Made by a program: the position numbers and the translations under genes. Below are positions 9,700-56,000 of a DNA stretch of 64,000 nucleotides, piece by piece. This stretch comes from Macrostomum lignano. Taxonomy: Eukaryota. The stretch is taken from the NCBI GenBank assembly GCA_002269645.1, contig NIVC01002239.1, positions 14,837-78,836 on the forward strand, read 5' to 3'. The notes under the pieces are model-generated. The model was not told where the DNA came from. It ran no database searches and worked only from the letters and a program-made list of their open reading frames with translations. The number at the start of each line of letters is the position of its first letter. Position 1 is the first letter of the stretch.

Positions 9700-12600
9700 A
9701 TGAACTGCACTCTGCTGCTGGGCCTCGCCGTCTGCTGCCTGGCACTGAATAGTCTTGTCCAAGCAATCTCTGCTGATGAGGCTCTTCTAAAAGCAATGGG
9801 TCTCAAGTCCATCTACAATCGAGAGGTTCGCCCGGAGCCAGACCTGGACAATGCCAACCTCATTGATGTGTCATTCAACCTGAACAGGCTGGTTAAAGTG
9901 GTACGCTCGTAATCGAACTTCTGAAACTCTTGCCTGAATAAGGATCTTACGTAAACCAGATTTTTAGATTTTTAATAAAGATTTTCTTAGTTTTTTAGCA
10001 ATCAAAATCCAATATTCTCCTTCTTTTCTGGATTTTCGCTGGAGTTTGGGGTCCTACTTGGGATCCAAAGGTCATTGACACACAAGTCATTCATATTCAT
10101 CGCAAATTCTTTTCATGCTTTTCAGGATTCCGCTGCTCAAGAAATTATGCTCCAGATGTGGTTCAACTTGGTGAGTCTTCATCCAATAGACTTAGTTGGG
10201 TAGGCTCTACAATTCCCTCATGAAGATTTGATCGAGCGCAAAGATCTTCGCCCCAAACCCCGGCAGGAGTGGACGGACCCTCGGCTGGCCTGGTTGGGAA
10301 AATTCAACTCAACTTTCGACAATGTGAGCTCGATATTCGTGCCGGCAGACCTGATCTGGCAGTCCGATGTCGGCTTCTTCGATCTGTGAGACCCTTCTGC
10401 ATCATTCTTTAGAGAAACTTTACGAGGAACCTGCTGACTTCATCATTTTTAAACAAATTTCCAAGGCCCACGGGCAGTGCATTCAGAAGGATGTACTTGG
10501 AACACTTTTAAATTATAAAATTATCATCACCTGAAGTCGCTTGATTTAACATTTTCCAATTTTTGGATATGAAACTTTTTCAATGCATTTTGAAATGCTA
10601 CTACTCATTTTACGAGTTGTCCTTGTCCGAAATTTAAAGCTTCATTCGCATTCTAGATTGGATTTCAAGCGAACATCAAGTGAGCGAGTAGTTCTTGTTC
10701 TGAAAAACAATGGCATGGTGCAGTACTCAATCGAGGTTCTCACTCTGTCCAAGTGCGAGATGGACATGGCCGGGTTTCCCTACGACACGCAGACCTGCAC
10801 TCAGCAGGTGGGCTCGGCAGTCCAGACAACGGAGACAATCAGGCTCAAGTTGGAAATTCAGAGCGAGAGGGATACTATAACTACCTATTAGGCTAAGAAT
10901 ACCGACTTCTGCATTCTGAATGTGACAGCGAAACAGACGGTCGATGTTGAGTACGACAAGATCGACTTTACTATAAAGATCAAGGTGAGTTCAACTATGA
11001 AAAAGAAAGCTAACTATCTGTTCAGTGCCCAACTGGCTGAGAATATTGGCAAGGGAATAAAAGTATTATCTAAGCCACGAATCAAAGGGCAGAACTGCAA
11101 CGCGTTTGACTCTCTCGCGAAAAGTACCTGTCTGGATTCGGTTCCGTGAGCGGTCACACAAATTTTGTGTTGCTATCCGTATGCGTTCTCAAGGTTTTGT
11201 GTCCTGGCTGGCTGTGGGTCAACCGTCATATCGCCTTGATACGGCAGAAATGTTCAAAAAGCCCCGCTAACGAAGTAACGAATGCACCTCAATTAGTCAA
11301 AAGCCAAAAAGAGTAAAATGACAGTAAAAGCACGAAATCTAGCAGCAAAGCGATCGGATTTCAATAAAATCTCCTGAAAACTCCTGAAATTTAAAAGCCA
11401 CTGATGGTAACGCTACAGAAAAATGCTTACTGTGTATTTCAGCGTCGAACCACTTTCTACGTGATGAACCTCATCTTGCCCAGCATCCTCCTGCTCGCCA
11501 TCTCAACTCTGGCCTTCTGCCTGCCGCCAGACTGCGGCGAGCGAATCTCGTTCAGCGTCACCATCGTGCTGTCCATGTGCGTGTTCCTGCAGCTCACTAG
11601 CAACTACATACCTGCTCAAAGCAATTCCGTGCCTCTACTCAGTGAGTGCAGCTTCAGCACTTTTTCATTTAGCATCTCTGCTCACTGTCACCCGAATGTA
11701 ATTTTGCATCAGAATAAAATTTTACCCTGAGCCAAGAGTCCTTTTTGGCAGTAATGTTTAAGCGCCGAAGGCAGGTGTTTTTTGGGAACTTGACCAGCTG
11801 AGCACCCCCATACTATTTACTCCCCTCACTCGAGCCCATCGCCGCGAGCACTTAATTAACCTGAGACCTGTTTTGCCAGAGAATAAGTACTTCGTTCACA
11901 GGCACAGCTACCTTCTGCTTCTCTACCTTCTGAGTGGCTAACTTCCCCTTGACCTCTGCTGTATGGCTAACTAACAGCTAATGGCAGCTAAGCAATAATC
12001 TCAAAGGTAGTGCCCCAAACTCAATGCCAGGAAACATTACCGAACACCGAATTTCCTTTGCCGCCAGCCTACTACTGCAGCCTAGCAGTCGGCATGACGA
12101 TGGTCAATGTTCTAGCGAATGCGTTCGTGTTGAACTGCCACTACCGCCGGCTGACGCAGCCCCGGGTTTCCAACTGGCTGATCCGCCTGCTGTTCCTCAA
12201 CCGGTTCGTGGCCCGTCGCAGGCGGCTGTTTGGCATCGATTCGGTGAGCGGCGACGCACTCTGGCCCAGCAATTGCTAAGCATTGCTGTTGGAATAGCAC
12301 GGATGTCAAAAGTTCATGGGGAATAGCTCAAATGCTACCCGATCCCTGGGACATTGTCGGGTTTTTTCAAGCTAGCTATCTGATATGTGCAAAATCTCCT
12401 TATAGCGCACTGCATGCGTTTGCTCTAGGCCTATGAAAATGTCAAAAGTGAAATTTTATTTTGCGTAGGAACTTTAGTTCCAAGAGGGTGCCCGCATGTG
12501 CACTGGCTAGCAGTATATATAGTAGATTTGATGTTGTTAGAAATCTACTCTTTGATGGAACAATGCGCACGATGTCTCACGTGTGTGCTTTTATAGTTAC

Positions 12601-13781
12601 CTGGACTTTTGGGTACGTAGAAACGGAAAAAGATGATTTTTTTCGCATCAAAGGCCAATAAAGCGACTTAATTTGTCTATGCTAGTTAATTGTTCCAGTG
12701 GAACTCCTCCTCTGGAGGAGAAAGGGGGTGGCAATCCCATCGCCAGAATTCCATTCCCTGAAATCCATCAGCCGAAATCCCATGACTTGAATCTTATCTT
12801 TCAAATCGTCTCCAAATCCTCTATAAAACCTTTCAAATCCTTTCAAATACCAAAACTTGTTTTCCGTGTTCACGAAAACTTTATATTAAATGGCCCAGCT
12901 ACTTAACAAATCCCAGACCTTTTTGTTTGGAGTTTGAAATTGAACTTTGAGCAGCCGTTAAATAGATTTCCAACTAAAAGCAGTATCTTTGCACAATCAC
13001 ATGACAAAATGAGAGTTAGAAAGGCTTATAGCCATTTTTTAAACCTAGAATCATAATTACGCACGTATTTAAAGAGGTAGACTACACCTTTTCACGTTCA
13101 ATTTTGAACAAAGTCCAGTTCTAAAAAAACTAGCGGAAATTCAATTCAGACAATTCAGACTGGGGACAATTTTGTCTATGGCTAAACCTCGCTTCCGTAG
13201 CAGAATGTTTTGAACTGGGGTTTGTTGCCCCAGTCTGAATTGTCTGAATTGAATTTCCGCTAGTTTTTTTAGAACTGGACTTTGTTCAAAATTGAACGTG
13301 AAAAGGTGTAGTATTGTTGCATGCACTAGGATCACCCGAAACAGTGAAAACCCGACATGGTAAATAAAGCCAGACGGCCCAACTCAGGCTTCAATCGTTT
13401 TGTTTGAGCAATCTCACGCTAGTTAACCAAACAATTTCGTTTCAAGTACATGTACTTTTCAGACGAGTTGATGCCTCAGTCCTCTTTACTGATTTTCAGC
13501 GCACCAGAAAGGCCGTCAACGCTCTGGATGGCAGAGCGGAGGGCTGTCAGAAACCTCCGGGCGAGTCAGCTGAAGGCAAGGACTCGCCATTGCCGGATGC
13601 CGCTCCCAGAAGGCTCGACTCGGCTTTCCTGCATTGTCATGACAACGATTGGGATGTTGTAGTCTCAGTCACGGACACTGTTTTCTTTCTGCTGTATTTT
13701 TTCTTGACCACGGCCATCATCGTGACTCTGGTGATAATCGAGACCAGGAACTCCAAGGTGAACTGCATCACTGGTGACTGA
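9700..13781 (+). pseudogene. LGIC1: nAChR-like Cys-loop channel subunit, 7 exons (9700-9900, 10126-10170, 10267-10385, 10657-10984, 11443-11641, 12068-12243, 13500-13781), one in-frame TAG at 10889-10891
   Basis: Signal peptide, YNREVRP, WTDPRLAW, WQSDV, Cys-loop CEMDMAGFPYDTQTC, M1-M2 LPPDCGERISFSVTIVLSMCVFLQ, M3 and M4 (DWDVVVSVTDTVFF). All splice sites are GT/AG with matching phases. The stop is the only lesion seen. Confidence 0.85.
13081..13312. mobile_element. MITE with perfect 85-bp terminal inverted repeats, in LGIC1 intron 6
   Basis: 13081-13165 is the exact reverse complement of 13228-13312. TA dinucleotides at 13083-84 and 13309-10 fit a Tc1/mariner-type TA duplication. Confidence 0.85.
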
Positions 13782-16698: not shown

Positions 16699-18371
16699 AT
16701 GCTGTGGGCTGCACTATCAAGCTTCATCGCTCTCTTGCTCTGCCGTGCCGCAGCGGCAGCGGCTGCCTCGGCTTCTCCAGACGAGGCCTTGGAATTGGCG
16801 CTGAAACTGAAATCCGCCTACAACAAGGACGCCAGGCCGCCACCTGACAACGGTTCGGCAAACTTGGTGACCGTCTTTTTCAACCTGAATAATTTGGTTC
16901 GAGTGGTGAGCCTCCAATTTTAATGTGTTTGTGAGCCGATATCATTGCTCTGAGCATGCAGTCTAGCTTGGATCTTTCCAACCCGCAGGACTCGGCAGCG
17001 CAGGAGATCATGCTGCAGGTCTGGTTCAGCCTGGTGAGACTTCTTGTTATTCGATGCGCAGCAATCTCGTAATAAAGTCGAAAAATGTCTTATTAAGATT
17101 TGGGGGCCGTAGCCTAGTGGGTCTAGCGCGGTGCTCTTATGTGCCAGCGGCCCAGGCTCGATTCCTGTGCGTATGAATGCGAACGTATCCGCGCGCTTGT
17201 GTGCCAAGGATCACTGTAGTGTACAGGACGAAAAATTCAAAGATTGCGTAATTTTAGGGGGTGCTACAGTGGTCCTTGTTGTGTGCCTGCTCAGAGGAGT
17301 CGGCGGAATGGGCAGTAATGCCTCTCGCCGGTTGTGTGACAATGTTCACCTGAAGTGCGCCAGGGTGCACACAGCCCCGAGTCCCTGCCTCTAACTAAAA
17401 AACTAAACTTATAAAGATTTCATCTACGTCGGATGATACGCGACCATTTCATAGGTTAAGTGTATTAAAGCTCACAGCAGTAAAATTTACCAACACACAA
17501 ATGTCTCAAGCAACTAGCATTTTTAAAGAAACAACGAGGCTTTGGATGGACGCCTATCTGCAACTGTCAAGTATTTACGCTTTTTTCCTTCCCAGTTTTC
17601 CACAATATCCGAATCTGCATGATAAGAGTTAAAAAGTAACAAATACAAGAGTTAAGACACTCATAGATAGCAACAACCTTCTAACTAAGAGACGATACTT
17701 GGGTAAGTGCATTAGCGCTTCCAGCGTATGTAAAAACTATCGATTTTTTCGAATAAATATCTCATGAAAGACAATTCAATGGGTTTGCATGGCATCACGG
17801 AAGCTTGTTTACGTACTCGTACGTGCCAACACTATTCCCTGCAGTACTGGTTTGACAGCCGCTTGGCCTGGAAAGGAAAATTCAACTCCAGCTTTGACAA
17901 CGTGAGCTCCATTTTCGTGCCAGCCGACCTGCTCTGGCAACCCGACGTGGCCTTTTATGACCTGTAAGTTCGTCCGTACGAACGATTGATGGCACTGATA
18001 AAGGTAGAGAAGTCACTTGTAGATCACAGACACTATAGTACCTGGATAGGCCACTCAGTACATTTGAGTATAAACTTTGAGTTGAGTATGAGATAATTAG
18101 AAGCACTTAAATGTAGTTTAGGTCAAGACTCACCCCTAGCCTCTCTCAATCTTCCGACCGCGTCTTTACACGCTTATTTACGTTTTCATTTTTTTGTCAT
18201 TTTACGATATCTTTTATTTTCTATGCTTCCTAAATATAAGATATATAATATATAGTATAATTGATTACACCTGCCACAATAGGCAGATGTGCAACTGACT
18301 GCTCAGCTATTTTCAGTCATTGCTATCTGAAGGCGCGTACGGCTATTCAGTCCAAGGAAATGGGAGGGTCG

Positions 18372-18416
<45 letters not shown>

Positions 18417-20594
18417 AATAATCAGAAAGGACTTTCTTAAGCTCATTAGCATCGTAATGAACAATGCATTCTAGTCTGGACCTGCGTCGAACATCCAGCG
18501 AAAAGATCGTGTTGGTTGTCAAAAGCGACGGCCTGGTGCAGTACACATCGGAGCTGCTCACCCATTCCAAGTGCGAAATGAATATGGCTGAGTTTCCTTA
18601 CGACACGCAGAGCTGTCACCAGCGGGTGTCCTCGGTGGTGCACACGAACGAGACAATCGCGTTGCGCATTAGGGAATCGAAACCCGGGGACTCGCTGACG
18701 GACTTTCTGGTCAAAAATATCGACTTCTGCATTGTGAATGTCAGTACTGCTAAGTCCATTGACGTGATCTACGATTTTGTGGAGCTCCGTGTTGATATCA
18801 AGGTTCGGTCCCAGTTAGAGGTTACATTTGCCCATGAATGCTTGTTTGATGCGGTCCGTTGGTGATAGATGTCTTTAATGGTGGATGTCTTTGTGATGGA
18901 TGTCTTTGTGATGGATGTCTTTGTGATGGATGTCTCTGTGATGGATGTCTCTGTGATGGATGTCCTTGTGATGGATGTCCTTGTGATGGATGTCTTTGTG
19001 ATGGATGTCTTTGTGATGGATGTCTTTGTGATGGATGTCTTTGTGATGGATGTCTCTGTGATGGATGTCTTTGTGATGGATGTCTTTGATGCATGGATGC
19101 CTTTGTGATGGATTTCTTTGATGCATGGATGCCTTTGTGATGGATGTCTCTGTGATGGATGTCTTTGTGATGGATTTCTTTGATGCATAACAAGAGGCTG
19201 ATGGAGTGATCATGCATGCAGATATTTAGATAGCATAGCACTGTACTAGAGCATCTGTGGGCTAGCGAAAAGATGTCACATAATGTAGGACTTACTGAGA
19301 ATTCCAGAATTTTCCATATCTAGCTCAAGGTTAAAATTTTAATGAGAATAATTTTGCATTCATTCTTAACTCCCGAAAATTATTGACAGCGGAAAACTAC
19401 GTTCTACATGATGAACCTAATTCTGCCCAGCTTCCTACTGCTCGCCATCTCAACTCTGGCCTTCTGTCTCCCACCGGAATGTGGAGAGAGATTGTCCCTG
19501 AGCATCACCATCGTGCTGTCCATGTGCGTGTTTCTGCAGCTGACTGGAAACTTCACGCCAACACAGGGAGACTCGGTGCCTCTTCTAAGTGAGTTCTTCG
19601 TTTTGCCGCAGTAGAAATGTGTCAAGTGTCATGGGGCTCATGGAGGGCTCATAGGGCAGTTGCTAAGATTTCAAAGGCTCATAGGGAACTGCAGGAATTC
19701 TTGGGCTCATGGAGAATCGATGAAATGCCACGGTTCATGGGGGGAATTGCTGAAATTCTGTGGCTCATGTGTTCAGATGCTTTGAGCCAAAGCCCATAGG
19801 GGATCTGATCTTTTAGGCTAGATATTCAGGGCGGATGCTTTTTTGGTTCTAACATCATTTTCCTTAAAAGATTGACAATAGTGACTGTACAAGGTTAAAA
19901 GCCACACGTAGTTTATTCAAAAAAAGATTCTTTCCTTTGTTGCCTCCCCAACGGGGGGGGGGCAGACGAAATTGCTAGTTGCAGTCTAAATCTTCTTAAA
20001 GAACAGCAGCAGAAAGTGTGTTGCTATTAGAAGAAATTGCTTGCAACATTGCAGCCTGGTACTTCAGCCTCGCGGTGCTTCTGACCATGGCTAACCTGGT
20101 TGCCAATGCCTTCGTTCTGAGCTGCCACTTTGAGCAGTTTTCTGAGAACGCTCGAGTCCCCGGCAGTCTCACTCGGCTGCTGTTTCTCAATAGGCTCTTC
20201 TGCGGCCATCCGTCTCGTCGAGAATCTCCGTCGGCACGAAATTCCAATGTGGTGATCGAGCCAACTGCTGCTGAAGTGCGTGACCAACAATCATTTACTG
20301 TGGATTGTTGATTAGCTTTTGCACAGGTGCATGCATTCACATATTTCATTCCAACTCTAGAACACGTCCTCCGACGGAACAGAACTTCGCGTCATCTCTC
20401 GGTTAGGAAAAGCCGAATCTGAAACAACGATGCAACCCCCAAGTTTCAAAAGTGACTGGAGCGCCGTTGTGACCGCCGCTGACCGCTGCTTTTTTGCCTT
20501 CTTCTTCTCGTTGACAATGTCGCTAGCGCTGGCGATTGCGATTCTGGATGCCATGAACTCCAAGACCAGCTGCATCGTGGGCAAGAATAATTAA
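16699..20594 (+). CDS. LGIC2: apparently intact nAChR-like Cys-loop subunit, ~442 aa, 7 exons (16699-16905, 16989-17033, 17845-17963, 18475-18802, 19390-19588, 20055-20251, 20361-20594)
   Basis: Signal peptide, YNKDARP, WFDSRLAW, WQPDV, CEMNMAEFPYDTQSC, LPPECGERLSLSITIVLSMCVFLQ, M4 DWSAVVTAADRCFF. Exons 2-5 are 45/119/328/199 bp as in LGIC1. The exon-6 donor (GTGATC) is the least certain boundary. Confidence 0.9.
17102..17410 (+). mobile_element. tRNA-derived SINE, family A copy 2 (internally deleted, interrupted by a micro-MITE), in LGIC2 intron 2
   Basis: Head GGGGCCGTAGCCTAGTGG (A box) ... GGCTCGATTCC (B box). Body matches the other copies. A-rich tail. Confidence 0.85.
17205..17278. mobile_element. 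74-bp micro-MITE with 15-bp TIRs and 8-bp target-site duplication (hAT- or P-like)
   Basis: TIR CAAGGATCACTGTAG / CTACAGTGGTCCTTG (14/15). TTGTGTGC is duplicated at 17197-17204 and 17279-17286, whereas the other SINE copies carry a single copy of this site. Confidence 0.88.
18262..18410 (-). mobile_element. Degenerate 3' fragment of SINE family B
   Basis: TTGATTACACCTGC...ATCTGAAGGC.CGTACGG...CACACAC resembles 50343-50430. Confidence 0.45.
18866..19186. repeat. 15-bp minisatellite (GATGGATGTCTTTGT)n in LGIC2 intron 4
   Basis: Direct reading. Confidence 0.95.
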
Positions 20595-21408: not shown

Positions 21409-22962
21409 ATGTCATACCAGACTCCCCAAGGCTTCATCGTTGCCATTCTGTACTTTGTATCCTTCACTGCCGCTGAGACCTCGCCTGACGAAGCTCTGTC
21501 ATTGGCACTGGGCTTGAAGACCAGCTACAACAAGGACGCGCGTCCTCCGCCCGATGCTGGCTCAGCGAATCAAATCGGCGTTTTCTTTAACCTGAACAGC
21601 CTCGCCAGAGTGGTGAGACTGATCGTTTTTAATCGTCCTTCATCGGCATAATTGGTTATAGCTACCTGTAGTTACAGCCAAAAATCAAGGCACACCCCAT
21701 GGGGTACATCAGCCCCGATTTACTCATTGGCAAGCATGCATAGCACACTCTGCGCCTTGGATGCTGTGAATCGCACGACAGGCTCCTGCAGGCCAATTTT
21801 TCTGTACGGACCGCAAATGATCGCGCGACTGTCTGTAAGACACAACAAAATTGTATCCAAGACCATTGATGACCGATTTTACTGCCCACAGAACTCAGCG
21901 ACAGGGGAGATGACTCTGCAAGTCTGGTTTAATTTGGTATGACTAATTTGCAATTAATAAGTTTCTGTTAAACTTTCCCACCCCGAAGTTGCAGCAGACG
22001 TACACATAAAGTGGCCAAGGTAAACTCAACAATTCTGGGTAATTAGAGAAAATTGGAATAAATGCTCCTCTAGTTTGGAGTTCCGACGGACCTCCAGCGA
22101 CAACATTGTTCTAGTTGTCGAAAACAACGGCTGGGTGTCACACACTGCGGAGTTTCTGACCCAGTCCAAGTGCGCAATGAATATGGCTAGCTTTCCCTAC
22201 GACACGCAGAGCTGTCGACAGCTCGTGTCCTCAGTGGTGCACTCAAATGACACCGTTAAGCTGTTCATTCGTCCAACAAAATCAGCGGACTCGCTGACAA
22301 CCTACCTGGATAGGAACAATGATTTCTGCATTGTCAACGTCAGCACAGCCAAGTCAGTAGATGTGCAATACGAATATGTTGAGCTCCGCGTTGCTATGAA
22401 GGTTTTGTGCTCAGGTTCTTCTCGATTGGTATTTTATGCTGACATTAGATTGTCAATACAATCATATCATATACAATCATATATGTTTCTCAATGGATTC
22501 GTCTGCGGGCGCCGATTTCGTCGAGAGCCGTCCGGAAGTCAAACTTTTGACAGTGTCGCGCAACGAAGCTCCATCGGAGTAAGTGTTCGTTTACTGCTAG
22601 TGCCGCTCTATCAGGAGAAGCAAAATCAAATACGCTCATATGTCACGGTCCCACAGGTCAGTGATGCTGACAGCAAAGAAATGAGCGATATCTCGTCGCG
22701 ACGAACCGTCAACTTCGACTCGCAGTTGGAGCAGCCTTCGCGTTGCCGGGCCACTGATGTCAACAGCTGGAGCGCTGTCGTGGCCACTGCTGAACGCTGC
22801 TTTTTCGCGATCTTTTTCGGCCTGACGCTGGCTTTGGCGCTGACGCTGGCGATCCTGGGGAGGCAGCGAACTCCCAGACCGTCTGCATCACTGGCAGAGA
22901 GAAGTAGCCGGCCAAGGGACGTCTGGGTTTCTAAAATGCAGTGTCTGATAAAACTGGAGTAG
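21409..22962 (+). pseudogene. LGIC3: Cys-loop pseudogene lacking exon 3 and M1-M3 (exons 21409-21612, 21892-21936, 22074-22401, remnant ~22483-22578, 22657-22907/22962)
   Basis: Exon 1 (YNKDARP), the 45-bp exon, the 328-bp Cys-loop exon (CAMNMASFPYDTQSC), the post-M3 FLNGF remnant and M4 (SWSAVVATAERCFF) are present. No WxDxRLxW/WQPD exon and no GER-M2 exon lie between them. A frameshift near 22858 hides the ancestral tail EAANSQTVCITGREK*. Confidence 0.85.
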
Positions 22963-26303: not shown

Positions 26304-28769
26304 ATGCCGCAGTCTCCGCTATCAAGCTTCATAGTTTTCTTGCTCTGCCGTGCCGCGGCGGCTGCCTCAGTGTCCCCGGATGAGGCCCTGAAAACGGCGC
26401 TGAATTTAAATTCCGACTACAACAAAGACGTCCGGCCGCCACCGGACAACGGCTCAGCCAACTTGGTGACCGTCTTGTTCAACTTGAAAAGCCTGGCTCA
26501 TGTGGTGAGTACTTCGGCTTTGTCGATTTTTTGTGAGAACACGTTGAATTTTCGAGCAGATCGTGAGCATTAAATTATTTCTAACCAAACAATGAAGGAC
26601 TCGGCAACGCAGGAGATCGTGCTGCAACCCTGGTTCAATTTGGTACGTGACTCATTCTTTTTATTAGAGGCAGGGGGGTTGTGTGCACCCTGGCGCAATT
26701 TAAGCGACATAGGCACACAACCGGCGAGAGGCATTACTGCCCATTCCGCCGATTCCCCTGAGCAGGCATACAAGCGCGCGGATACGTTACGCAGGAACAC
26801 CCTCACACAGGAGTGTACAGCGGCACCAACATTATTTATTGTTAGGCATGTACACTTCACTGCGCCTTGGGGGGGTTGGCTCTCAAGGCCGTTAATTGCA
26901 CAAGCGAGCCAAGCCAAGATTCCAATCCAGCCCCAAATTAATGTGGCTGCACTTGGAATCGAGCCTGGGTCGCGGCACACCAGAGCAGCTGCGCTACCGC
27001 TGGGCTACGGCCCCCCCTGTACGTGACTCATAAGTTCAGTGCTGCCGCAGAGACATTGACATATCGAGTTTTATTGCATCATACTCACGGTGCAGCCATG
27101 AGCTATCGATTCATTTAATTTGCACTTTCACTACAGTACTAGCGAGACAGCCGCCTGGCCTGGAAAGGAAAATTCAACTCTACCTTCGATAACGTGAGCT
27201 CCATTTTTGTACCAGCCAGTCTGCTCTGGCAACCGGATGTGGCCTTCTGCAACCTGTAAGTGCGACACTTTTTCCTTGGGCTTGATCATTCCTATGCAAT
27301 TGCAGCCATACCGCTTTGCTAAGTCTCCCAATGGCACCCCGATTGTTCTCTTAGAGAAACTTCAAGATAATGGAGTAACGGTGACATTCATCTAATGGTA
27401 CTCATGTTGACCTTTCTCATACTCACCTTTCAGCCTGCACTTCCGGCGCACCTCCAGCGATAAAGTTTTCCTGACTGTGAGCAGCGACGGCATGGTGCTG
27501 TTCCTTGTTGAGCTGCTCTCCTGGTCCAAGTGCGAAATGAATATGGCCAACTTTTCCTATGACATGCAGATCTGCCACCAGCGCGTATCTTCGGTGGTGC
27601 ACACGAGAAAAACCACTGCGCATCGAGCCTGGACCACCTGGAATCACGCCTTCCCTCTTCAAGAACCACGACTTCTGCGTGATGAACGTCAGCGTTTCAA
27701 ATTCTATCGATAAGTGGAACTACGATATTGTTCAGCTGCAGGTGGAAATAAAGGTAGAAACTTCTCAGAATTTGGTTGAGTTGGAACGGGGATCACACAC
27801 TTTTTGTGGACTCCCCTGTCATAGTCCCCGTTTTTTCGCAGAGCCAGTTTCACCTTTGACACTTTCAGCGTAAAGCACTATTCTACTTCATGAACCTGAT
27901 CATTCGAGTCTCGTGCTGCTCTACATCTCTACCCTGGTCTTCTGCCTGCCGCCCGAGTGCGGAGAGCGAATATCATTGAGATTCACCATCGTGCTGTCTA
28001 TGTGCGTGTTCCTGCAGCTCAGCAGCAACTATATGCCTCCACAGGGGGACTCTGTGCCTCTGCTCAGTGAGTTTCGAGCTAATTTCACTCCAACACTTTG
28101 TTCGCTGATAGTGAACTACAGGCTGGAATATTGAGACTCATGACCTATTTGTCCTCCTCCAATTTCCAGCCTGGTACTTCAGCCTCGCGGTCTTTCTGAC
28201 AATGCTTCACTTGATTGCCAACATTTTCGTACTGAGCTGCTACTTTGAGCATTCGTCCGAGAATGAGCATACCAAAGTCCCAAGCCGGCTAACGCGACTT
28301 CTGTTTCTCAATAAGTTTGAATGCGCCCGGCTGCAGTGCAGAATGTGCTACCAGGTTCGAAACCACGGCGAAACCGCCGCTGTACGGAGCTCGGTGAGAG
28401 TAAGGGAGATACGGAGACCTGGGTTGGATTTTGTTAAGCCTGCCAAGCCTGTGTCGGATTTGGCAGACCTGCAAGTTTCTGTGTCCATTTGCGGTTAAAA
28501 ATTGGCACCCCATTCGCAGGAATCCAACGAGAGCGAGTTGAACGTCGTCTCGCCCAGGCGACCAGCTACGCCAAGTCAACCGCAGGCGGAGCAGACTCCG
28601 CGTTGCCGGGACAACGACCCTCGCAAAGAATGGATCCCCATTGCTGTTCGCCGCCGACCGCTGCTTCTTCGCTGTCTTCTTCAGCCTGAAGCTGGCGCTG
28701 ACGCTGACGCTGTTAATCCTGGAGATCACGAACTCGCGGACCAACTGCGACATGTCGAGTAATGATTGA
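26304..28769 (+). pseudogene. LGIC4: Cys-loop pseudogene, 7 exons (26304-26504, 26598-26642, 27137-27255, 27434-27753, 27869-28066, 28170-28393, 28520-28769)
   Basis: Close paralogue of LGIC2. Lesions: TGG>TAG at 27140-42, exon 4 is 320 bp vs 328, exon 5 is 198 vs 199, frameshift near 28640, FPYD>FSYD. Confidence 0.9.
26655..27014 (-). mobile_element. tRNA-derived SINE, family A copy 3 (most complete), in LGIC4 intron 2
   Basis: The minus strand reads GGGGCCGTAGCCCAGCGG (A box) ... GGCTCGATTCC (B box), then the shared body and an A-rich tail. Confidence 0.87.
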
Positions 28770-34169: not shown

Positions 34170-36596
34170 ATGCTGCTACTAGGCCTAATTTTGATCTGCG
34201 CTGTCACCGCGACCGCCACGGTGCCAGATGTCTCCTCTGATGAGCGAATTGCCGCGGCACTGCGCTTAAAGTCTGCCAACGGCTACAACTCGGATGTGAG
34301 ACCGCCACCGGATAATGGGACGGCTAATCTGGTCCGGGTGCACACCAACTTTAATAGTCTGGTGGCTGTCGTGAGTTTTGGACGATATCAACTAATGAAC
34401 TCGACATATGTACGCAAATGTTCCCACATTTACTCATTAATTATTCATTATTTCTGCTGTTCAGAATTCCGCATCTCAGGAGGTCAGTCTACTCCTGTGG
34501 CTTACACTGGTAAGACATATTTAGAGACCGCGAATCACTCTCTAATATTCTGCAGATTTTTCAGGATCAGCAACAGGTAAAAAGTCATAAACTTTTTTCC
34601 AGTCCTGGACAGACCGCCGACTTGCCTGGCACGGTCGCTTCAACGACAGTTTGGACAGCGAGACGGCGGTCTACTTTCCGGCCAGGCTGCTGTGGCTACC
34701 GGATGTGTCTTTCATCGATCTGTGAGACCGGGATGTGTTCGTTACCATTTTGATTCTCACTAGCTGCTCTGTTCTACTAGGTAGATACTCGTTTGTGTAT
34801 TAATTAATATAAATGAAAAAAAATCAATGAGTCCATTGGTTGTTTATACGAGTGTACAGTCTGCAATGTGGATACCCACTTTGCTTTTGTATATTCCTCT
34901 AACTGGTAAGTAGAAGCCCTCTATAGAATATTACTGGGACTTTGTACAACATTTTTCTTGCGGATTCAACGAGTTGACGATGCGGCATTACTGAAGCATT
35001 TTAAGAGTAAGCAAATCGTGTGTCTGAACTGCATGGTTAATGGAAGCTCTAATAGACGTTACTAAACACAAGAGCAATAAAGAAGCAATCCACGGGATGC
35101 TTGCAACGTTACACTGTCCAACCAAAACTTGCAGCTTGTTCATACAGCGGGTGTCATTTAGCAACGCAATGGCTCACGTTAGCTCTCAGGGACCGGTAAT
35201 GTACACCTCCCAGTACGTGATTACCAGCAAGTGCCCAATGAGCATGTTCGAGTTTCCCTATGACAAGCAGCGCTGCGTAGTGCCCATCTCGTCAGCCATT
35301 CATTCGAAGCAGGTGCTGGCTTTGCACATCGGAGCCTACCTAGAGAACGACTCCATCACGAAGTACCTGGCCCGCAACGACGAGTTTTGCATTACAGGAG
35401 CGACAATCAGGAAGACTGTGGACTACTACTTTGATATTCTGCAGTTTGCCATCACTTTCAAGGTAAGAATATTGCGTCTGTATCTAAAAAATTTAATTGG
35501 CTTGCAAAATTTTTAGGCAACATCACGTTCCAATATTTTTTTTCAGAGACGGCCCATTTTCTACGTGATAAACCTAATCCTGCCCAGCCTCCTGCTGCTC
35601 GCCATCTCCACCGTCACCTTCCGACTGCCACCGGACTGCGGCGAGCGGATGTCATTCAGCATCACCATCGTGCTGTCCATGTGCGTGTTCCTGCAGATGG
35701 TGAATGAGCACACGCCCACGCAGAGTGAATCCGTCCCTCTGCTAAGTGAGTTCTGTGGACATAAATCCAGATATCTGCTGCAGTTAATTGCACAGGAGTT
35801 GTGTCACTCGACAAAAAACGATATAAATCTATTCGTTTATGATTTACGTTTATGTTGATGAAAATGATTTGTAATGATTTTTGAGTAACAACAGCAAAGT
35901 TACTCAAGTTAAAATTCGCAAAAGAAATTTAGCTATAAACTTAGAGTGGCTTGGGTTATCACGTTCTTTGTTGAGTTGTTTTTTAATGCGAGTCTATCTG
36001 CATACCAGACGACCTTGTGAATGAATGACTGCATACTTACTTGCCGGACCTCGTACGAGCTAGTTTGTTGTTTATTCTTCTTATCAATGTAGCACGAGCT
36101 CCGGCATCCTTTACTTGTACCCACGGCTTTGTATGTACCACTTCCTCTCGACGTTAACCCACTCGATTTCAAATTTTTCTCATAGGCACTCGCCCACTCT
36201 CTTCTATTTCCTGGTCCAGCCTGCTACTGCACTCTGGCGGTGGTGATGACAATGACCGTCGTCTTGGGCAACGCCTTCGTTCTCAGCTGCCACAGCCGGT
36301 GTTGCCGCTCCGCTCCCCCGGGACGTCTGCTCCGGACGCTGTTCCTTCACTCGTTCGTCGCTCGTCGGAGCCGTCGGCAGCCGGAAGCCGACGGTTCAGT
36401 CCGGCAGAGCTTGTCGCCCGACAACGAGTCTGAGACCGCCTGCGGGAACGCTCTGCGCTGTCAATGGAGCACCATAATTTCAGGCGTTGACACCTGCCTG
36501 TTTGCGTTCTATTTTGGCATCACCGTGTCTTTGGTGATAGCACTGGCCGCTATTGGACTTGTTACAGATAGCCAGAAGTGCATCAATGAGGACTAA
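34170..36596 (+). CDS. LGIC5: apparently intact nAChR-like subunit, ~422 aa, 6 exons (34170-34370, 34465-34509, 34603-34721, 35135-35462, 35547-35745, 36220-36596)
   Basis: Signal peptide, YNSDVRP, WTDRRLAW, WLPDV, CPMSMFEFPYDKQRC, LPPDCGERMSFSITIVLSMCVFLQ. M3 and M4 are in one exon. Exon sizes are 201/45/119/328/199 as in the paralogues. Confidence 0.92.
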
Positions 36597-50019: not shown

Positions 50020-53000
50020 TCAGTAGGCGCTGTACTGGCAGGCTCGCACAGAGCTCGTCTCAACGCAGCAAACTGCGACGGCTATGGTGAGAGTGGCGGA
50101 CAGGAACAGGGCGAACAGACACCTGTCAGCGGCCGCAACCACGATCAGCCATTCGTTGACTTCTCTGCCGGCTGCCTCCTCCGTCTCGGCGTCAGAGCTG
50201 CCCGAAGTCTTGTTGGCTGGTAGTACCCTCTGTGGAAATGGGACGGCACAATGTAACGATGCAATGTTACACCAGGAGCTGATCTTGACGTTTTATCAGA
50301 GAAATAGCGAGTGGGAACTAAGAAACTGTTCAATAATAATAATTGATTACACCTGCACTAATCGGGACAGATCGACAGCTCAGCCGCAGCTATTGCGCGG
50401 CGCATCTGAAGGCTGCGTACGGTCGTCACACACACCCTCAATTACCCCAGCTAATGCTGACACCCATTTTACAGCTGGATAAACTGAAGCAATGCAGAGT
50501 TAGGTGTCTTGCTCAAGGAAACAAATTGTTCCAGTGGGATCGACCACTAGGCTACAACCCCCAATGCAACCAACCACCATAGATGGCGCCAACCATCATT
50601 CACTTGACCTAATTACTATATAGTTATCTATATAAAAGGCTAAACGTTGAATGCGAGTGAGTCCGTAACTTTGCGGTTATAACCAGCTAGCATATAAGTT
50701 ACTAAAGAGTTTGAATCTCACTTTTAGATACACATTTAATAGCTCAATTTATCTTGCTTAACTCTTCAAAAGCTTCTTATAAGTCCGAGTTCTCCCCTCT
50801 ATAGATTTATATTCAACTCGCAGGCTTAGTGGCGTGCACAATAATTTATTTAACCCTAAGGGTCGACAATATTTGCTGTCTTGGTGGCCGCCCCTGTCTC
50901 TTGGTGGCCGCCCCTGTCTCTTGGTGGGCGCCCTGTCTCTTGGTGGGTGCCCCTGTCTCTTGGTTGGCGCCCCTGTCTCCTTGTGGCTCAAATTTAGCTT
51001 CTGTCAGATGCCTTTCGAGATTGTCGCGTGACTCACCGCGTCTGCCGTTCGCTTGCAATTCCCAGTAATGCAGCGGTTGAGAAACAGCAGCCGGACCAGC
51101 GGACTGAACACCCGCCTGCCGCCCCGCTGCAGCTTGAAGTGGCAGTCGAGCACGAACACATTGCCGAGCAGGCTGCCCATGGTCAGCATGGCCACCGCGC
51201 TGCAGTGATAGGCTGAAATTTGATTAAGAAGATGACTACTATAAGTAGCTCGAAACGCTTTTAACAGTAGGAATACCAAGCCATTTTTTCGCCCGTCGAA
51301 CTACCAAGAGAAGGGGGGAATCCCCCTGACCATTTTTTTGCTGCGCCGGAACGGAGTAACGCAGGCACACGAAATTCAAGAAAACGGGCCAACTTTTTGT
51401 TGCGCACCTTCTCAAACAAGAATCAAGTCGCCAGATCTCCGGACCGTTGAGATATTCGACGATTCTGCCAGAAGGTCGGATTTTTCCCATAAGCGCCAGT
51501 GTATTCAGTGCACCCCTGTGCGCCAGTCAGCACTGCGCCTCAGTGCAGCCTTGCCAAGCCTCCAAATTTCATCAGCACGTAGACCACATGTGTCTGCATC
51601 AGCTCTGACTTCGTTGGTCACTAGCCTTCACCCAGGCGGAGCTTCTGGACTTTCAACAGGTGGCACCAGGTGACTATGGACACCCTGATACGAATTTCTC
51701 TAGTTTCGCTGATCAAGCCTCGACAGTGGGCAAAATCAACTGCTGGACATCCTCAGCTGGTCTGTCAAGCATTCCGTCATCACCTCGACGCCGTCGGCAC
51801 CTTCAACAGATGACACAAGATGACTATGAACATCCTGTTGCAAATATGTCAGATTTTTCTTATCAAGCTTCAATAATGGGCAAGCCTCAACCGACGGACA
51901 TTCTCAGATAGTCTCTCGAGCATTCTATCATCACCCCGACGCCGTCGGCTCCTTCAACAGATGACAACAGGTGACAATGGACACGCTGTTGCGAATTTCT
52001 TTGATGTCGCTGACCAACATCAATAATAGGCAAACTTTAACTTCTGGTCGTTCTCAGCTATACTCTCAAACAGTCTATCATCACCGGACATAATTAAGTA
52101 AACTTGATGACGTAATTTGCTAATTAAACTGTAAATTGAACAGAATCTTCGCGAAGAAAAAATTACTAGAAATTATCCAATTTTCTGTTCGGAATGAAGA
52201 TCAATTCATAATATACTGGATATCTAGTCTTGTGTCTTAAAAATTGCTAAAATTGTTAACAATAAAAATATTCTCTTTTGGGTGTCTATAGTCGGTTTCG
52301 TCTTCTTGAAGGTGCCGACGACGGCTGAATGACGACCGGATGCTTGAAAAACTAGTTGAGGATACCTAGCAGTAGAGGCTTGCCCATTATTGAAGATTGA
52401 TCAGAACAGTCTAACATATTTGCAACAGGATGCCCATAATCGCCTGGTGTAATCTGTTGAAGGTGCCGACGGTGTCGGGGTGTTGACGGAATGTTTGAGA
52501 GACTAGCTGAGGATGCCCAGCAGTTGATTTTTGCTCACTGTCAAGGCTTGATCGGCGAAACTAGAGAAATCTGCATCAGGCTGTCCATAGTCACTTGGTG
52601 CCACCTGCTGAAGGTCCAGAAGCTCCGCCTGGGTAAAGGCTAGTGACCAACGAAGTCAGAGCTGATGCAGACACATGTGGTCTACGTGCTGATGAAATTT
52701 GGAGGCTTGGCGAGGCTGCACTGAGGCGCAGTGCTGACTGGCGCACAGGGGTGCACTGAATACACTGGCGCTTATGGGAAAAATCCGACCTTCTGGCATA
52801 ATCGTCGAATATCTCGACGGTCCGGAGGGCTGGCGACTTGATTCTTGTTTGAGAAGGTGCGCAACAAAAAATTAGCCCGTTTTCTTGAATTTCGTGTGCC
52901 TGCGTTACTCCGTTCCGGCGCAGCAAAAAAATGTCAGGGGGGGGGGGGAATTCCATCCTCTTGGTAGTTCTACTGTTAATACTGGCTTCACGCGAAAGTA

Positions 53001-56000
53001 CGAGAAAAATAACACTACTGAGATTGGACCTTTTCATTTCTTCGGATGAAAGGCTAATCCTTACAATACTTCCGTATGACTTGCCTGTTATAAATTTTAC
53101 AAAAATGCGTTGTAAAAGCAAAGAACCAATAAAACTGGCAATCATATATTTAAAGATAAGTGTTGTATCTTCTTTCGATGTGTGTGTGTGTGTGTATGCA
53201 TCCTTGCACTTTTGTACATTCTACCGAAAGTTTTGTATCAGGATCCAAAAACGGAGTTCTGAAATTTATTTAACTCACTGAGCAGAGGCACAGCTTCGCT
53301 CTGCGTTGGGGTGTAGCTGCCAGCCAGCTGCAGGAACACGCACATCGACAGCACAATGGTGACGCTCAGGGACATTCTCTCGCCGCATTCCGGTGGCAGG
53401 CGAAATACCAGGGTTGAGATGGCGAGCAGCAGGAGGCTGGGTATGACGATGTTCACCAGGTAGAATGTTGATCGGCGCTTTGGTGAACGAAATCAAATTA
53501 TTAATTTTCGAGTGAGTTCCACAGTAAATTATCCAAAATTTACTTTGTCTCAGGTGACAACCTAGGAGGCCACCCTGTCCGTTTGCTTTCTACACCTTTC
53601 TACAGCTTCATTAACCTCTTCCACTTTGAAAACTCCTCTCGGATCCCTTCTGTCAGATTCCTCCCCCCCCGAACCCTTTCCTTTCGACCCCTGCCCTTCC
53701 GACCTATTCCCCTCCAACCTCTTCCCCTCTGACCCCTTCCCCTCTGACCCCTTCCCCTCTGACCCCTTCCCTCTGACCCCTTCCCCTCTGACCCCTTCCC
53801 CTCTGACCCCTTCCCCTCTGACCCCTTCCCCTCCGACCCCTTCCCCTCTGACCCCTTCCCCTCTGACCCCTTCCCTTCTGACCCTTCCCCTCTGACCCCT
53901 TCCCCTCTGACCCCTTCCCCTCCGACCCCTTCCCCTCTGACCCCTTCCCCTCTGACCCCTTCCCTTCTGACCCTTCCCTCTGACCCCTTCCCCTCTGACC
54001 CCTTCCCCTCTGACCCCTTCCCCTCTGACCCCTTCCCCTCTGACCCCTTCCCCTCTGACCCCTTCCCTTCTGACCCTTCCCCTCTGACCCCTTCCCCTCT
54101 GACCCCTTCCCCTCTGACCCCTTCCCCTCTGACCCCTTCCCCTCTGACCCCTTCCCCTCTGACCCCTTCCCTTCTGACCCCTTCCCCTCTGACCCCTTCC
54201 CCTCTGACCCCTTCCCCTCTGACCCCTTCCCTTCTGACCCTTCCCCTCCAACTCTTCCCCTCCAACTCTTCCCCTCCAACTCTTCCCCTCCAACTCTTCC
54301 CCTCCAACTCTTCCCCTCCGATCCCTTCCCCCCGACCCAGTAAGCAGCGCACCGAGAAGACGACAACCAGCCGAACGAATGGAAATTCGCCTTCAGCTCC
54401 TTCCTCAGTGAAGACGCTCTGCACGCAGAACTCGTGGCTGCCTGTGGCTCCGCTAAACTCCACCTCGCTGGCCGGCATCATCCGCACTCTCACAGAGGCC
54501 GAGCTCTGCATAATCGAGCCGATCTTGACGCCGCAACGCTGCGCATCGTATGGGAAATTGCGCATGTCAAAGCGGCACTTGAAGCGGACCATGAACTGCT
54601 GGCTGTGTGCCACGCCGCCTGCGCTGGTCAGGTTTAGCAGAACGCGGTCGCCCGATACCCGCTGAAGGCTCAAGCTGCAGGCCTCAGTGAGTGCAAAAGT
54701 ACTTTTATTTTGTAGGCACGTAAATTTCACTATTCTATTTGACTGGCTTCAGCAGGGGCTGTGCATCGATTTTTAAGCTTTTAATTTCATCATCACTCTT
54801 GCAGGATTGGAGAGACAGAGAACGTACTTTAGTTTCTAGACTTCTGCATAGACAGTAACTGTAATTTAGCCCTTATTCTGTAAATGGCTTAGATAGTGAA
54901 TGTACTTTTAGTCTTCTTAGGTTTAGTTAAAGCCAGGGGGCTGTGTGCACCCTGGCGCACTTTAAGCGACATTGTCGCACAACCGGCGAGAGGCATTGCT
55001 GCCCATTCCGCCGACTCCCCTGAGCAGGCACACAAGCGCGCGGATACGTACGCAGTCACACGCACAGGCACTCACACAGGAGTGCACAGCGGCCCTAACT
55101 TTATTTATCGTTAGGCATGTACACTTCACTTTAGTTCCTGGTCTATGATTGGATATGCATCTCTATAAAAAATTTCCACCTGTCTAAGAAGGACACGTCC
55201 GGCTGCCAGACGAGCTCCGCAGGTGCAAACACGGTTCCGATGCTGTCAAAGCTGGAGTTGAATCGTCCCCGCCAAGCCAGACGATTGTCGTTCCAGACCT
55301 GAAGTTTTGAGATTTGAATTTTCAAGTCAATTTTCATACGGAGCAGCAGCAGCGAATTGAATATTCATTAGCTCACCAGAGTAAGCCACACCTGCAAGGT
55401 CAACTCCTGCGCTGTTGAGTCCTGAAACAATGAGGCTCCCCAGTTTAAGCAATGTCATTAAATAGAAACTAATTAGAAGTCTTAAATTTGAGGCCGAACA
55501 AAATTTGTCTGGTAAACAATTGCGACTTGCTGAACCCAAGCAGACTGCTTCTAGAGTTACAAGACATTATACAAAGCAAATGGTCAGTATTCGGACACCA
55601 ATGTTAGACATTTGGACTCCAAACACTAGAAATCAGTGGTGAATTTTCGGACACTAGACTTACAGATCAGTGTTAGACTATTGAACACCAGAAATCGGTG
55701 TAGGAGTTTACGGACACTAAGGATCAGTTTTTTAGATTTGGACACTTGAAATCAGTGTTGCAATTTTGGACACTAAATATCGGTGTTGGAGTTTCGCTAG
55801 AGATCGGTGTTGGAGTTTCGGACACTAGAGATCGGTGTTGGAGTTTCGGACACTAGAGATCGGTGTTGGAGTTTCGGACACTAGAGATATTTGCTGTTTA
55901 AATTCCGATCCCAAGCCCAGCTCCTCACCACAGCGGCCAAGGCGGACATAATTGCCTGCACTATGACGGTGTTGGCCGAGCCATTGTCCGGCTTCGGCCG

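What the first reader, a model, noticed from the sequence alone, without database searches (positions are those of the whole stretch)
18475..18802. Canonical ACh-binding site dismantled in every paralogue: no loop-B Trp, no vicinal Cys-Cys, loop C about 6 residues short
Seen: after the Cys-loop the alpha7 'GSW' position reads GSA, SSV, SSV, SSV, SSA, GSI in LGIC1-6. The loop-A Tyr position is F/Y/deleted/C/I/L. Loop C (e.g. AKSIDVIYDFVEL) has no CC and is about 6 residues shorter than recalled human alpha7. The LGIC6 loop C is strongly acidic (EEGAEGEF). Established: these aromatic residues form the cation-pi box for ACh. Inference: ACh is unlikely to be the ligand, and the paralogues may differ in specificity.
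Basis: partly seen in the sequence, partly recalled or inferred. Interest (0 to 1): 0.7.

Follow-up and report, generated by a model that had tools for sequence, protein, structure and literature searches.

The report
Flatworm orphan Cys-loop channel gene cluster
The region is the ligand-binding exon of one gene in a tandem cluster of six flatworm (Macrostomum lignano) nicotinic/5-HT3-like channel genes that keep a normal cation pore but lack key acetylcholine-contact residues, a pattern already common among invertebrate 'orphan' receptors.

Summary
The sequence facts are correct. Positions 18475-18802 are exactly exon 4 of LGIC2. This exon holds the Cys-loop and loops B, F and C. LGIC2 is one of six tandem Cys-loop receptor paralogues in a Macrostomum lignano window.

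- **Lost in all six copies:** the loop-B Trp is A/V/V/V/A/I, there is no vicinal Cys-Cys, and loop C is six residues shorter than in human alpha7.
- **"Dismantled" overstates it:** the loop-D Trp and an aromatic at the TyrC2 position (Y/F) survive in all six. TyrA survives as Y in LGIC2 and as F in LGIC1.
- **Copy integrity:** only LGIC2, LGIC5 and LGIC6 are intact. LGIC1 has an in-frame stop, LGIC3 has lost exons, and LGIC4 has a stop plus frameshifts.
- **One event, not six:** the loss is a single inherited ancestral state. It is unresolved whether the ancestor ever had an alpha-type Cys-Cys site.
- **Conservation pattern:** the pore (GER...L9') and the coupling elements are extremely conserved, while the binding loops are the most variable parts. 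Even so, dN/dS stays below 1.

My best reading is that these are functional orphan cation-channel subunits with a non-cholinergic principal face. The main rival is that they are non-alpha accessory subunits; human muscle beta1 also lacks the loop-B Trp and the Cys-Cys. Loss of the loop-B Trp is common, seen in 66 of 194 related domains. This is a new member of a known kind and of moderate interest.

The parts
18475..18802 (+). LGIC2 exon 4 (the finding). It holds loop E strands, the Cys-loop C-EMNMAEFPYDTQS-C, loop B 'VSSVVHT', loop F, and the beta9-loop C-beta10 hairpin 'CIVNVSTAKSIDVIYDFVELRVDIK'.
   Evidence: AG/GT boundaries and 328-nt length. Pfam Neur_chan_LBD hit at 1.8e-25.
18635..18637 (+). 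LGIC2 codon GTG (Val) at the loop-B Trp position (alpha7 W149).
   Evidence: Read directly from the sequence. Alignments.
18758..18772 (+). LGIC2 loop C tip 'IDVI' plus a Tyr codon (TAC, 18770-18772) aligned with alpha7 Y195 (TyrC2).
   Evidence: MAFFT alignments. AF2 secondary structure.
17956..17958 (+). LGIC2 TAT (Tyr) at the loop-A Tyr position (alpha7 Y93), in exon 3.
17022..17024 (+). LGIC2 Trp codon at the loop-D position (alpha7 W55), in the conserved 45-nt exon 2 (16989-17033).
16699..20594 (+). LGIC2, a complete gene of 450 aa. Exons: 16699-16905, 16989-17033, 17845-17963, 18475-18802, 19390-19588, 20055-20275, 20361-20594.
   Evidence: Model with all-canonical splice sites and an open frame. 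About 99% identical to M. lignano UniRef protein P0001 across shared exons.
9700..13781 (+). LGIC1, with the same 7-exon structure but an in-frame TAG at 10889-10891 in exon 4 (10657-10984). Loop B reads GSA.
21409..22870 (+). LGIC3, a truncated copy. Exon 1 is 21409-21612, exon 2 is 21892-21936, and exon 4 is 22074-22401 (loop B SSV). A TM4 remnant starts near 22765. Exon 3 and the TM1-3 exons are missing, and joining exon 2 to exon 4 would shift the frame.
   Evidence: The counterpart inside P0009 keeps TM1-3.
26304..28766 (+). LGIC4, a pseudogene. A TAG at 27140-27142 replaces the Trp of W.D..L.W. Exon 4 (27434-27753) is 8 nt short and exon 5 (27869-28066) is 1 nt short. Loop B reads SSV.
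34170..36596 (+). LGIC5, a complete gene of 422 aa. Exon 4 is 35135-35462. Loop B reads SSA and loop C reads 'RKTVDYYFDIL'.
50020..56168 (-). LGIC6, a complete gene of 436 aa on the minus strand. Exon 4 is 54353-54674 (322 nt). Loop B reads GSI and loop C is acidic, 'TEEGAEGEFPF'.
19390..19588 (+). LGIC2 exon 5, covering pre-M1, M1 and M2: 'PPECGERLSLSITIVLSMCVFLQL'. It has the -1' Glu and 9' Leu of a cation-selective pore and is nearly invariant across the family.
   Evidence: Invariant columns. Regional identity.

Best explanation
**Shown.**
- The window carries a tandem cluster of Cys-loop pentameric ligand-gated ion channel subunit genes belonging to a clade found only in Macrostomum lignano.
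- The clade lies in the cationic nAChR/5-HT3 branch.
- Three copies are intact (LGIC2, LGIC5, LGIC6) and three are damaged.
- Signal peptide, Cys-loop FPYD, pre-M1 Arg, M2-M3 'SVPLL', four TM helices and a cation-type pore (GER, 9' Leu) are all conserved.
- The principal-face agonist loops lack the loop-B Trp, TyrC1 and the vicinal disulfide, and loop C is a minimal hairpin.

**Inferred.**
- The intact copies make functional cation channels.
- Their (+) face cannot hold acetylcholine in the canonical cation-pi box.
- They are orphan receptors gated by some other ligand or ligands.
- Binding loops that are variable yet still constrained give the paralogues different specificities. This is the arrangement seen in cephalopod chemotactile receptors and other lophotrochozoan orphan nAChR-like channels.
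For: **Family and fold.**
- Pfam LBD and TM domains are both found.
- The best PDB sequence matches are 5-HT3A at 1e-38 and alpha7 at about 1e-36.
- Foldseek matches to alpha7, muscle nAChR and 5-HT3A reach E about 1e-17.

**Gene integrity.** The models have canonical splice sites and conserved exon sizes of 45/119/328/199 nt.

**Binding-site residues.**

**Conservation.**
- M1-M2 is invariant over 7 family members.
- Pairwise identity is 0.65-0.73 in pre-M1 to M2, against 0.19 in loop B and 0.23 in loop C. In canonical alpha-like subunits those loops are 0.43-0.46.
- dN/dS is 0.13-0.4 per exon and below 1 in every exon-4 partition. For LGIC1-3 it is 0.56 in loop B and 0.15 in loop C. The loops are constrained, not junk.

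**Taxonomic scope.** The family is monophyletic in 97 of 100 bootstraps and contains only M. lignano sequences.

**Precedents.** Octopus chemotactile receptors (PMC11526382), Alpo4 (PMC10338036), and the short, poorly conserved loop C of ZAC (PMC11536092).
Against: - No functional or expression data are available.
- TrpD and a TyrC2-equivalent aromatic are kept in all copies, and TyrA in LGIC2. An amine ligand, even ACh, is therefore not excluded; GABA-A and glycine receptors use Tyr/Phe boxes (my own knowledge, not tested here).
- Retention of TrpD with loss of the principal-face residues is also the signature of non-alpha subunits.
- Three of the six copies are broken, so part of the cluster is decaying.
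- dS is saturated (about 1-2), so the dN/dS values are rough.
- The AF2 model is of only moderate quality (mean pLDDT 60). It was built from P0001, whose gene model skips 'YWFDSRLA'.
Confidence: 0.5

Rival explanations
1. These are non-alpha accessory or complementary subunits. They would co-assemble with canonical alpha-type M. lignano nAChR subunits and contribute only their (-) face, or a purely structural position. ACh would still gate the pentamer through the partner's (+) face.
For: - Human muscle beta1 (PDB 9gu0_B) has Tyr, not Trp, at the loop-B position, and no Cys-Cys.
- The loop-D Trp, which is a complementary-face residue, is the one box residue kept in all six copies.
- Loop B is the least constrained segment.
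Against: - The complementary loops E and F are also poorly conserved, at 0.23 and 0.30 identity.
- A lineage-specific clade of at least 10 distinct such subunits is a large number for a purely structural role.
- The loop C hairpin is under purifying selection (dN/dS about 0.15-0.34), although it would be unused in this model.
- Beta1 keeps an aromatic at the loop-B position, whereas these subunits have A, V or I.
Confidence: 0.28
2. These are still amine- or ACh-gated receptors that use a rearranged aromatic box made of TyrA, the TyrC2-equivalent and TrpD, without the loop-B Trp.
For: - LGIC2 keeps 3 of the 5 box residues, and all copies keep 2.
- Other Cys-loop receptors bind amines with Tyr/Phe boxes or with a loop-C Trp (my own knowledge of GABA-A, GlyR, MOD-1 and ACC channels, not tested here).
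Against: - The loop-B position is aliphatic in every copy.
- No Trp occurs in loops A-C of the intact copies.
- Loop C is too short to cap a pocket in the canonical way.
- LGIC5 and LGIC6 lack TyrA as well.
Confidence: 0.1
3. The cluster is a decaying remnant of a duplicated gene family, and the unusual binding site simply reflects relaxed constraint on the way to pseudogenisation.
For: - LGIC1 has a stop, LGIC3 has exon deletions, and LGIC4 has a stop plus two frameshifts.
- The LGIC4 counterpart in another assembly is also disrupted in exon 4.
Against: - LGIC2, LGIC5 and LGIC6 have complete ORFs with intact splice sites, despite dS of about 1-2 between them.
- dN/dS is 0.13-0.4.
- The pore is invariant across the wider family.
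- The same loop-B state is shared by unlinked family members P0002-4, P0008 and P0012.
Confidence: 0.08

Closest known systems
Cephalopod chemotactile receptors (octopus CRT1, squid CRB1)
   Same: - They are nAChR-like cationic pentameric channels in a lophotrochozoan.
- The canonical ACh-binding residues are lost.
- The genes form lineage-specific tandem expansions.
- Binding pockets are diversified on a conserved channel (PMC11526382, PMC10338036).
   Different: - They are not orthologous. CRT1 is a weaker match (8e-20) than 5-HT3A or nAChRs, and the family forms its own M. lignano-only clade.
- The genes here are intron-rich.
- Sensory expression and hydrophobic ligands are unknown here.
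- ZAC literature describes CRT1's loop C as longer than the shortest known; the hairpin turn here is only 4 residues.
Non-alpha nAChR subunits (e.g. human muscle beta1)
   Same: - There is no vicinal Cys-Cys.
- The loop-B Trp is replaced (beta1 has Tyr).
- The complementary-face Trp and the cation pore are retained.
   Different: - The family is not orthologous to vertebrate beta1.
- The loop-B residue is aliphatic rather than aromatic.
- It is a large lineage-specific clade.
- Partner alpha subunits are not identified.
Zinc-activated channel (ZAC)
   Same: - It is a cationic Cys-loop channel with a very short, poorly conserved loop C.
- Acidic residues in or near loop C are implicated in ion sensing (PMC11536092). 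This recalls the 'EEGAEGEF' of LGIC6.
   Different: - ZAC is a vertebrate family, and no specific sequence relationship was shown here.
- Metal or proton gating was not tested.
Alpo4 and other orphan lophotrochozoan nAChR-like receptors; bivalve nAChR expansions
   Same: - These are orphan cationic Cys-loop receptors without the Cys-Cys tip.
- They belong to lineage-specific tandem expansions that include degenerate copies (PMC10338036, PMC6896357).
   Different: - Alpo4 keeps the whole aromatic box, including the loop-B Trp.
- The bivalve expansions are largely intronless retrogenes, whereas these genes keep 6-7 exons.
5-HT3A receptor
   Same: - It is the best PDB sequence match for LGIC2 (1.2e-38).
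- It shares the 'FCLPP(D/E)xGER' pre-M2 motif and the 'HT' after loop B.
- It has no Cys-Cys, and its loop C has 'SID'.
   Different: - 5-HT3A has the essential loop-B Trp (TSW) where LGIC2 has Val.
- LGIC6 matches alpha7 better.
- The relationship is not resolved.

Membership tests
Cys-loop pentameric ligand-gated ion channel superfamily | Extracellular Cys-loop C-x13-C with (F/Y)PxD; Neur_chan_LBD and Neur_chan_memb domains; four TM helices. | tested here: met
   Motif scan. Pfam hits at 1.8e-25 and 3.2e-10. AF2 helices M1-M4. Foldseek to nAChR/5-HT3A at E about 1e-17.
Cationic branch (nAChR/5-HT3/ZAC) | M2 with a -1' Glu ('GE(K/R)') and a 9' Leu; best matches to cationic receptors. | tested here: met
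   'GERLSLSITIVLSMCVFLQL' is invariant in the family. The listed PDB sequence hits (top 60 per search) are all nAChR, 5-HT3A or octopus CRT1 chains.
nAChR alpha-type (agonist-binding) subunit | Vicinal Cys-Cys at the loop C tip (alpha7 C190-C191). | tested here: not met
   Absent in all six copies. Both alignments place a 6-residue gap there.
nAChR alpha-type (agonist-binding) subunit | Loop-B Trp (alpha7 W149). | tested here: not met
   A, V, V, V, A, I in LGIC1-6.
nAChR alpha-type (agonist-binding) subunit | Loop-A Tyr (Y93), and loop-C Tyr C1 (Y188) and C2 (Y195). | tested here: inconclusive
   Y93 position: F, Y, absent, C, I, L. Y188 falls in the gap. Y195 position: Y, Y, Y, Y, F, F. The loop C alignment is model-dependent.
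5-HT3 receptor | Loop-B Trp (W183 in mouse 5-HT3A, 'TSW') and orthology to 5-HT3. | tested here: not met
   5-HT3A 'TSWLHT' aligns with LGIC2 'SSVVHT'. 5-HT3A fell in the sister group in only 11 of 100 bootstraps.
Cephalopod chemotactile receptors | Orthology to the CR clade. | tested here: not met
   CRT1 scores 8e-20, weaker than nAChR and 5-HT3A. The family is an M. lignano-only clade.
Cephalopod chemotactile receptors | Expression in sensory cells and gating by hydrophobic or bitter ligands. | not testable with these tools
   No expression or electrophysiology data are accessible.
Non-alpha structural/complementary nAChR subunit | Lacks principal-face residues but keeps the complementary-face Trp (loop D); obligate co-assembly with alpha subunits. 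| tested here: inconclusive
   The residue pattern fits. Co-assembly is not testable. Loops E and F are not conserved.
Zinc-activated channel | Gating by Zn2+/Cu2+/H+; very short loop C. | not tested
   A short loop C is shared (PMC11536092). No sequence comparison with ZAC was made, and function cannot be tested.

The most novel reading that the evidence does not exclude
The Macrostomum-specific clade could be an independently evolved family of chemosensory or environmental-ligand-gated cation channels. That would make it a flatworm parallel to cephalopod chemotactile receptors, with each paralogue's diversified pocket tuned to a different non-neurotransmitter cue. The acidic LGIC6 loop C, for example, might sense a cation or metal.
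Probability: 0.2. Interest if true: 0.6.

Novelty: new member of a known kind. Interest (0 to 1): 0.35.

Why it matters
If the intact copies are functional non-cholinergic channels, they add a flatworm case to a recurring theme. In that theme, nAChR-like scaffolds are recruited for new ligands while the pore is kept.

M. lignano is a tractable laboratory flatworm with RNAi, transgenesis and cell atlases (my own knowledge, not checked here). The ligand and the cell type could therefore be found.

The practical lesson for annotation is that these genes should not be labelled acetylcholine receptors. In addition, the public M. lignano models for this locus are chimeric or mis-spliced.

The general phenomenon is already well documented. 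About one third of related domains in public data also lack the loop-B Trp.

Tried and rejected
- **Bacterial-style ORF reading.** It was rejected because the genes are spliced, so I built exon models by hand.
- **Handing spliced proteins to the restricted tools.** I did not hand them to the structure tool, which states the same restriction. UniRef models P0001-4 were used instead, although P0001 mis-splices exon 3.
- **Profile run of the search for homologous proteins.** It added little.
- **Fetching another assembly.** The look-up of encoding contigs has no record for P0001. I therefore could not compare haplotypes at the DNA level, nor confirm the LGIC1 stop or the LGIC3 deletion there.
- **Placing the family as 5-HT3-like or nAChR-like.** The PDB ranking flips between paralogues, and the NJ bootstrap does not resolve the sister group. 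I therefore dropped any claim of 5-HT3 orthology.
- **Positive selection in the binding loops.** dS is saturated and all partitions give dN/dS below 1. Positive selection is neither shown nor excluded.
- **Pfam on the two neighbouring Cys-rich ORFs.** No hit was found.
- **Literature search.** I found no paper that characterises this clade. M. lignano LGICs have been catalogued only as 'nAChR-like' (PMC6896357 does not cover flatworm binding loops; PMC6881066).
Full report
**What is at the coordinates**

The window is eukaryotic and intron-rich. Positions 18475-18802 are bounded by an AG acceptor and a GT donor. They encode 109 codons that hold a canonical Cys-loop (CEMNMAEFPYDTQSC), the loop-B strand, loop F and the beta9-loop C-beta10 hairpin.

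Joining this exon to its neighbours gives a 7-exon, 450-aa gene, LGIC2 (16699-20594). It has a signal peptide, Pfam Neur_chan_LBD and Neur_chan_memb domains, four TM helices, and canonical GT-AG introns throughout.

A protein search returned Macrostomum lignano UniRef entries. P0001 is about 99% identical to LGIC2 across shared exons, so the window is from this free-living flatworm.

**The six paralogues**

tblastn and a motif scan find six copies.

| Copy | Span, strand | State |
|---|---|---|
| LGIC1 | 9700-13781, + | In-frame TAG at 10889-10891 in exon 4, where the other copies have Leu |
| LGIC2 | 16699-20594, + | Complete ORF, 450 aa |
| LGIC3 | 21409 to about 22870, + | Lacks exon 3 and the TM1-3 exons; joining exon 2 to exon 4 would shift the frame |
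| LGIC4 | 26304-28766, + | TAG replaces the Trp of W.D..L.W; exon 4 is 8 nt short and exon 5 is 1 nt short |
| LGIC5 | 34170-36596, + | Complete ORF, 422 aa |
| LGIC6 | 56168-50020, - | Complete ORF, 436 aa |

Exon sizes of 45, 119, 328 (322 in LGIC6) and 199 nt are conserved.

A 1792-aa fused UniRef model from another assembly (P0009) covers the same array. Its LGIC3 counterpart keeps TM1-3. Its LGIC4 counterpart has the Trp and an intact exon 5, but is still disrupted in exon 4.

**Check of the observation**

I verified my recalled human alpha7 sequence as identical to PDB 9j37_A and used it as the ruler.

- **Loop B.** The position is the seventh residue after the second Cys, in an ungapped strand. 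It is A, V, V, V, A, I in LGIC1-6, W in alpha7, 5-HT3A and a tick alpha7, and I, I, Q, V in unlinked M. lignano relatives P0002, P0003, P0004 and P0012.
- **Loop A.** The Tyr position is F, Y, absent, C, I, L.
- **Loop C.** There is no Cys-Cys. Two MAFFT alignments, of 12 and of 109 sequences, both place a six-residue gap against alpha7-type loop C. An AlphaFold2 model (mean pLDDT 60; LBD core 70-85) shows beta9 and beta10 joined by a four-residue turn, 'IDVI'. LGIC6 reads TEEGAEGEF.

All items are confirmed.

- The loop-D Trp (alpha7 W55) lies in the conserved 45-nt exon ('LQVWF') and is present in all six copies.
- The residue aligned with TyrC2 (Y195) is Y, Y, Y, Y, F, F. HMMER also aligns LGIC6 'EFPFV' to alpha7 'PYPDV'.
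- LGIC2 therefore keeps three of the five aromatic-box residues, so 'dismantled' is too strong.
- The shared state is one inherited change, not six.
- A more distant M. lignano relative (P0046) shares lineage motifs (RPPPD, (D/E)(F/Y)C). It is closer to LGIC2 (151 bits) than to alpha7 (109 bits) and still has FGSW.

**Is the channel otherwise intact?**

In a 7-member family alignment, pre-M1, M1 and M2 are almost invariant: PS.LLLAIS, PP.CGER.S.S.TIVLSMCVFLQ. The -1' Glu and 9' Leu of cation-selective pores are present. The Cys-loop FPxD and the M2-M3 'SVPLL' are also conserved.

Mean pairwise identity by region:

| Region | This family | Canonical alpha-like subunits |
|---|---|---|
| pre-M1 to M2 | 0.65-0.73 | 0.50-0.59 |
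| Loop B | 0.19 | 0.43 |
| Loop C | 0.23 | 0.46 |

Synonymous divergence between copies is saturated (dS about 1-2). dN/dS is 0.13-0.4 per exon and below 1 in every partition of exon 4. Among LGIC1-3 it is 0.56 for loop B and 0.15 for the loop C hairpin.

The intact copies are therefore old genes under selection, and their binding loops are variable but not neutral.

**Placement**

- phmmer against the PDB ranks 5-HT3A first for LGIC2 (1.2e-38, against alpha4 and alpha7 at about 1e-36). It ranks alpha7 first for LGIC6 (6e-37, against 5-HT3A at 4e-32 or weaker).
- Foldseek gives alpha7, muscle nAChR and 5-HT3A at similar scores.
- A HMMER profile search over 1.84 billion representatives finds 13,677 relatives. 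The closest are all M. lignano. After them come mollusc and annelid nAChR-like proteins and teleost '5-HT3A-like' proteins.
- In NJ bootstraps the family is monophyletic in 97 of 100 replicates. Its sister group is not resolved. It was free of Cys-Cys in 67 of 100 replicates and contained 5-HT3A in 11 of 100.

Whether a Cys-Cys loop C was lost or never present cannot be decided here.

**How unusual is it?**

Among 194 Cys-loop domains in the 154 proteins collected, 66 lack a loop-B Trp. These include teleost 5-HT3A-like, bivalve and annelid proteins.

Human muscle beta1, a genuine AChR subunit that does not bind agonist on its (+) face, has Tyr at this position and no Cys-Cys.

The literature already describes:
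- lineage-specific tandem expansions of diverse nAChR-like genes in lophotrochozoans, with degenerate copies (PMC6896357);
- the orphan Alpo4 (PMC10338036);
- octopus and squid chemotactile receptors that no longer bind ACh (PMC11526382);
- ZAC, with a very short, poorly conserved loop C (PMC11536092).

M. lignano LGICs have been catalogued only as 'nAChR-like' (PMC6881066). I found no study of this clade.

**Interpretation**

Best reading (confidence about 0.5): the intact genes encode functional cation-channel subunits. Their principal face cannot form the canonical cholinergic cation-pi site, so they are orphan receptors with paralogue-specific pockets.

Main rival (about 0.28): they are non-alpha accessory or complementary subunits working with alpha-type partners. 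This reading is favoured by the universal retention of the loop-D Trp. It is weakened by poor conservation of loops E and F and by constraint on loop C.

Lesser rivals are a rearranged amine or ACh site built from TyrA, TyrC2 and TrpD (about 0.1) and wholesale decay of the cluster (about 0.08).

None of these can be settled without expression and electrophysiology.

**Verdict**

This is a new member of a known kind, namely divergent orphan nAChR/5-HT3-like subunits in a lineage-specific tandem array, and it is of moderate interest.

Noticed in passing
window 10889-10891: LGIC1 has a single in-frame TAG in exon 4, where LGIC2, LGIC3 and LGIC5 have CTG (Leu). The gene is otherwise intact, with dN/dS of about 0.3 against LGIC2. 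This could be recent pseudogenisation, an allele, or a sequencing error.
   Followed up: partly
window 21409-22870: LGIC3 has lost exon 3 and the TM1-3 exons. The exon-4 reading frame runs on into a remnant of the M3-M4 loop and TM4. The counterpart in another M. lignano assembly (inside P0009) keeps TM1-3, so this is a haplotype-specific deletion or an assembly collapse.
   Followed up: partly
window 27140-27142, ~27620, ~27905: LGIC4 carries a TAG in place of the invariant Trp of W.D..L.W. Exon 4 is 8 nt short and exon 5 is 1 nt short.
   Followed up: yes
LGIC2 18728-18730 (Cys of 'DFC') and equivalents in all copies: A family-invariant Cys in '(D/E)(F/Y)C' sits where nAChRs have the 'GEW' Trp. 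It has no obvious invariant extracellular partner. Further invariant Cys residues lie in the M1-M2 loop ('PPECGER') and at M2 12'.
   Followed up: no
P0001, P0009, P0010 (UniRef M. lignano models of this locus): The public gene models are chimeric or mis-spliced. P0001 has a spurious 90-aa N-terminus and skips 'YWFDSRLA'. P0009 (1792 aa) fuses the LGIC3 tail, LGIC4, LGIC5 and non-coding translation. P0010 fuses LGIC6 with a neighbouring gene.
   Followed up: partly
window 57727-64000: A 30-bp satellite (about 209 copies, 92% matches, strong G over C skew) runs to the end of the window.
   Followed up: no
window 18862-19182; 53686-54331; 44607-46125; 4032-4549; 7037-7410; 2833-3511; 48940-49726: There are many minisatellites and microsatellites. 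They include 15-mers inside intron 4 of both LGIC2 and LGIC6, (AGAT)380, and (CAGA)n flanking an 83-N gap at 6954-7036.
   Followed up: no
window 47448-48245 (-) and 39581-40291 (-): Two paralogous Cys-rich ORFs with signal-peptide-like starts lie here. By eye they carry C-type-lectin-like motifs (WVW, GQPDG). Pfam gave no hit at E<0.01.
   Followed up: partly
P0046 (M. lignano relative, not in window): It keeps loop-B 'FGSW'. In a BLAST alignment it has 'GACQE' opposite alpha7 'ECCKE', which may be a vestige of a Cys-Cys loop C. Its gene model looks damaged around loop A and the second Cys of the Cys-loop.
   Followed up: partly
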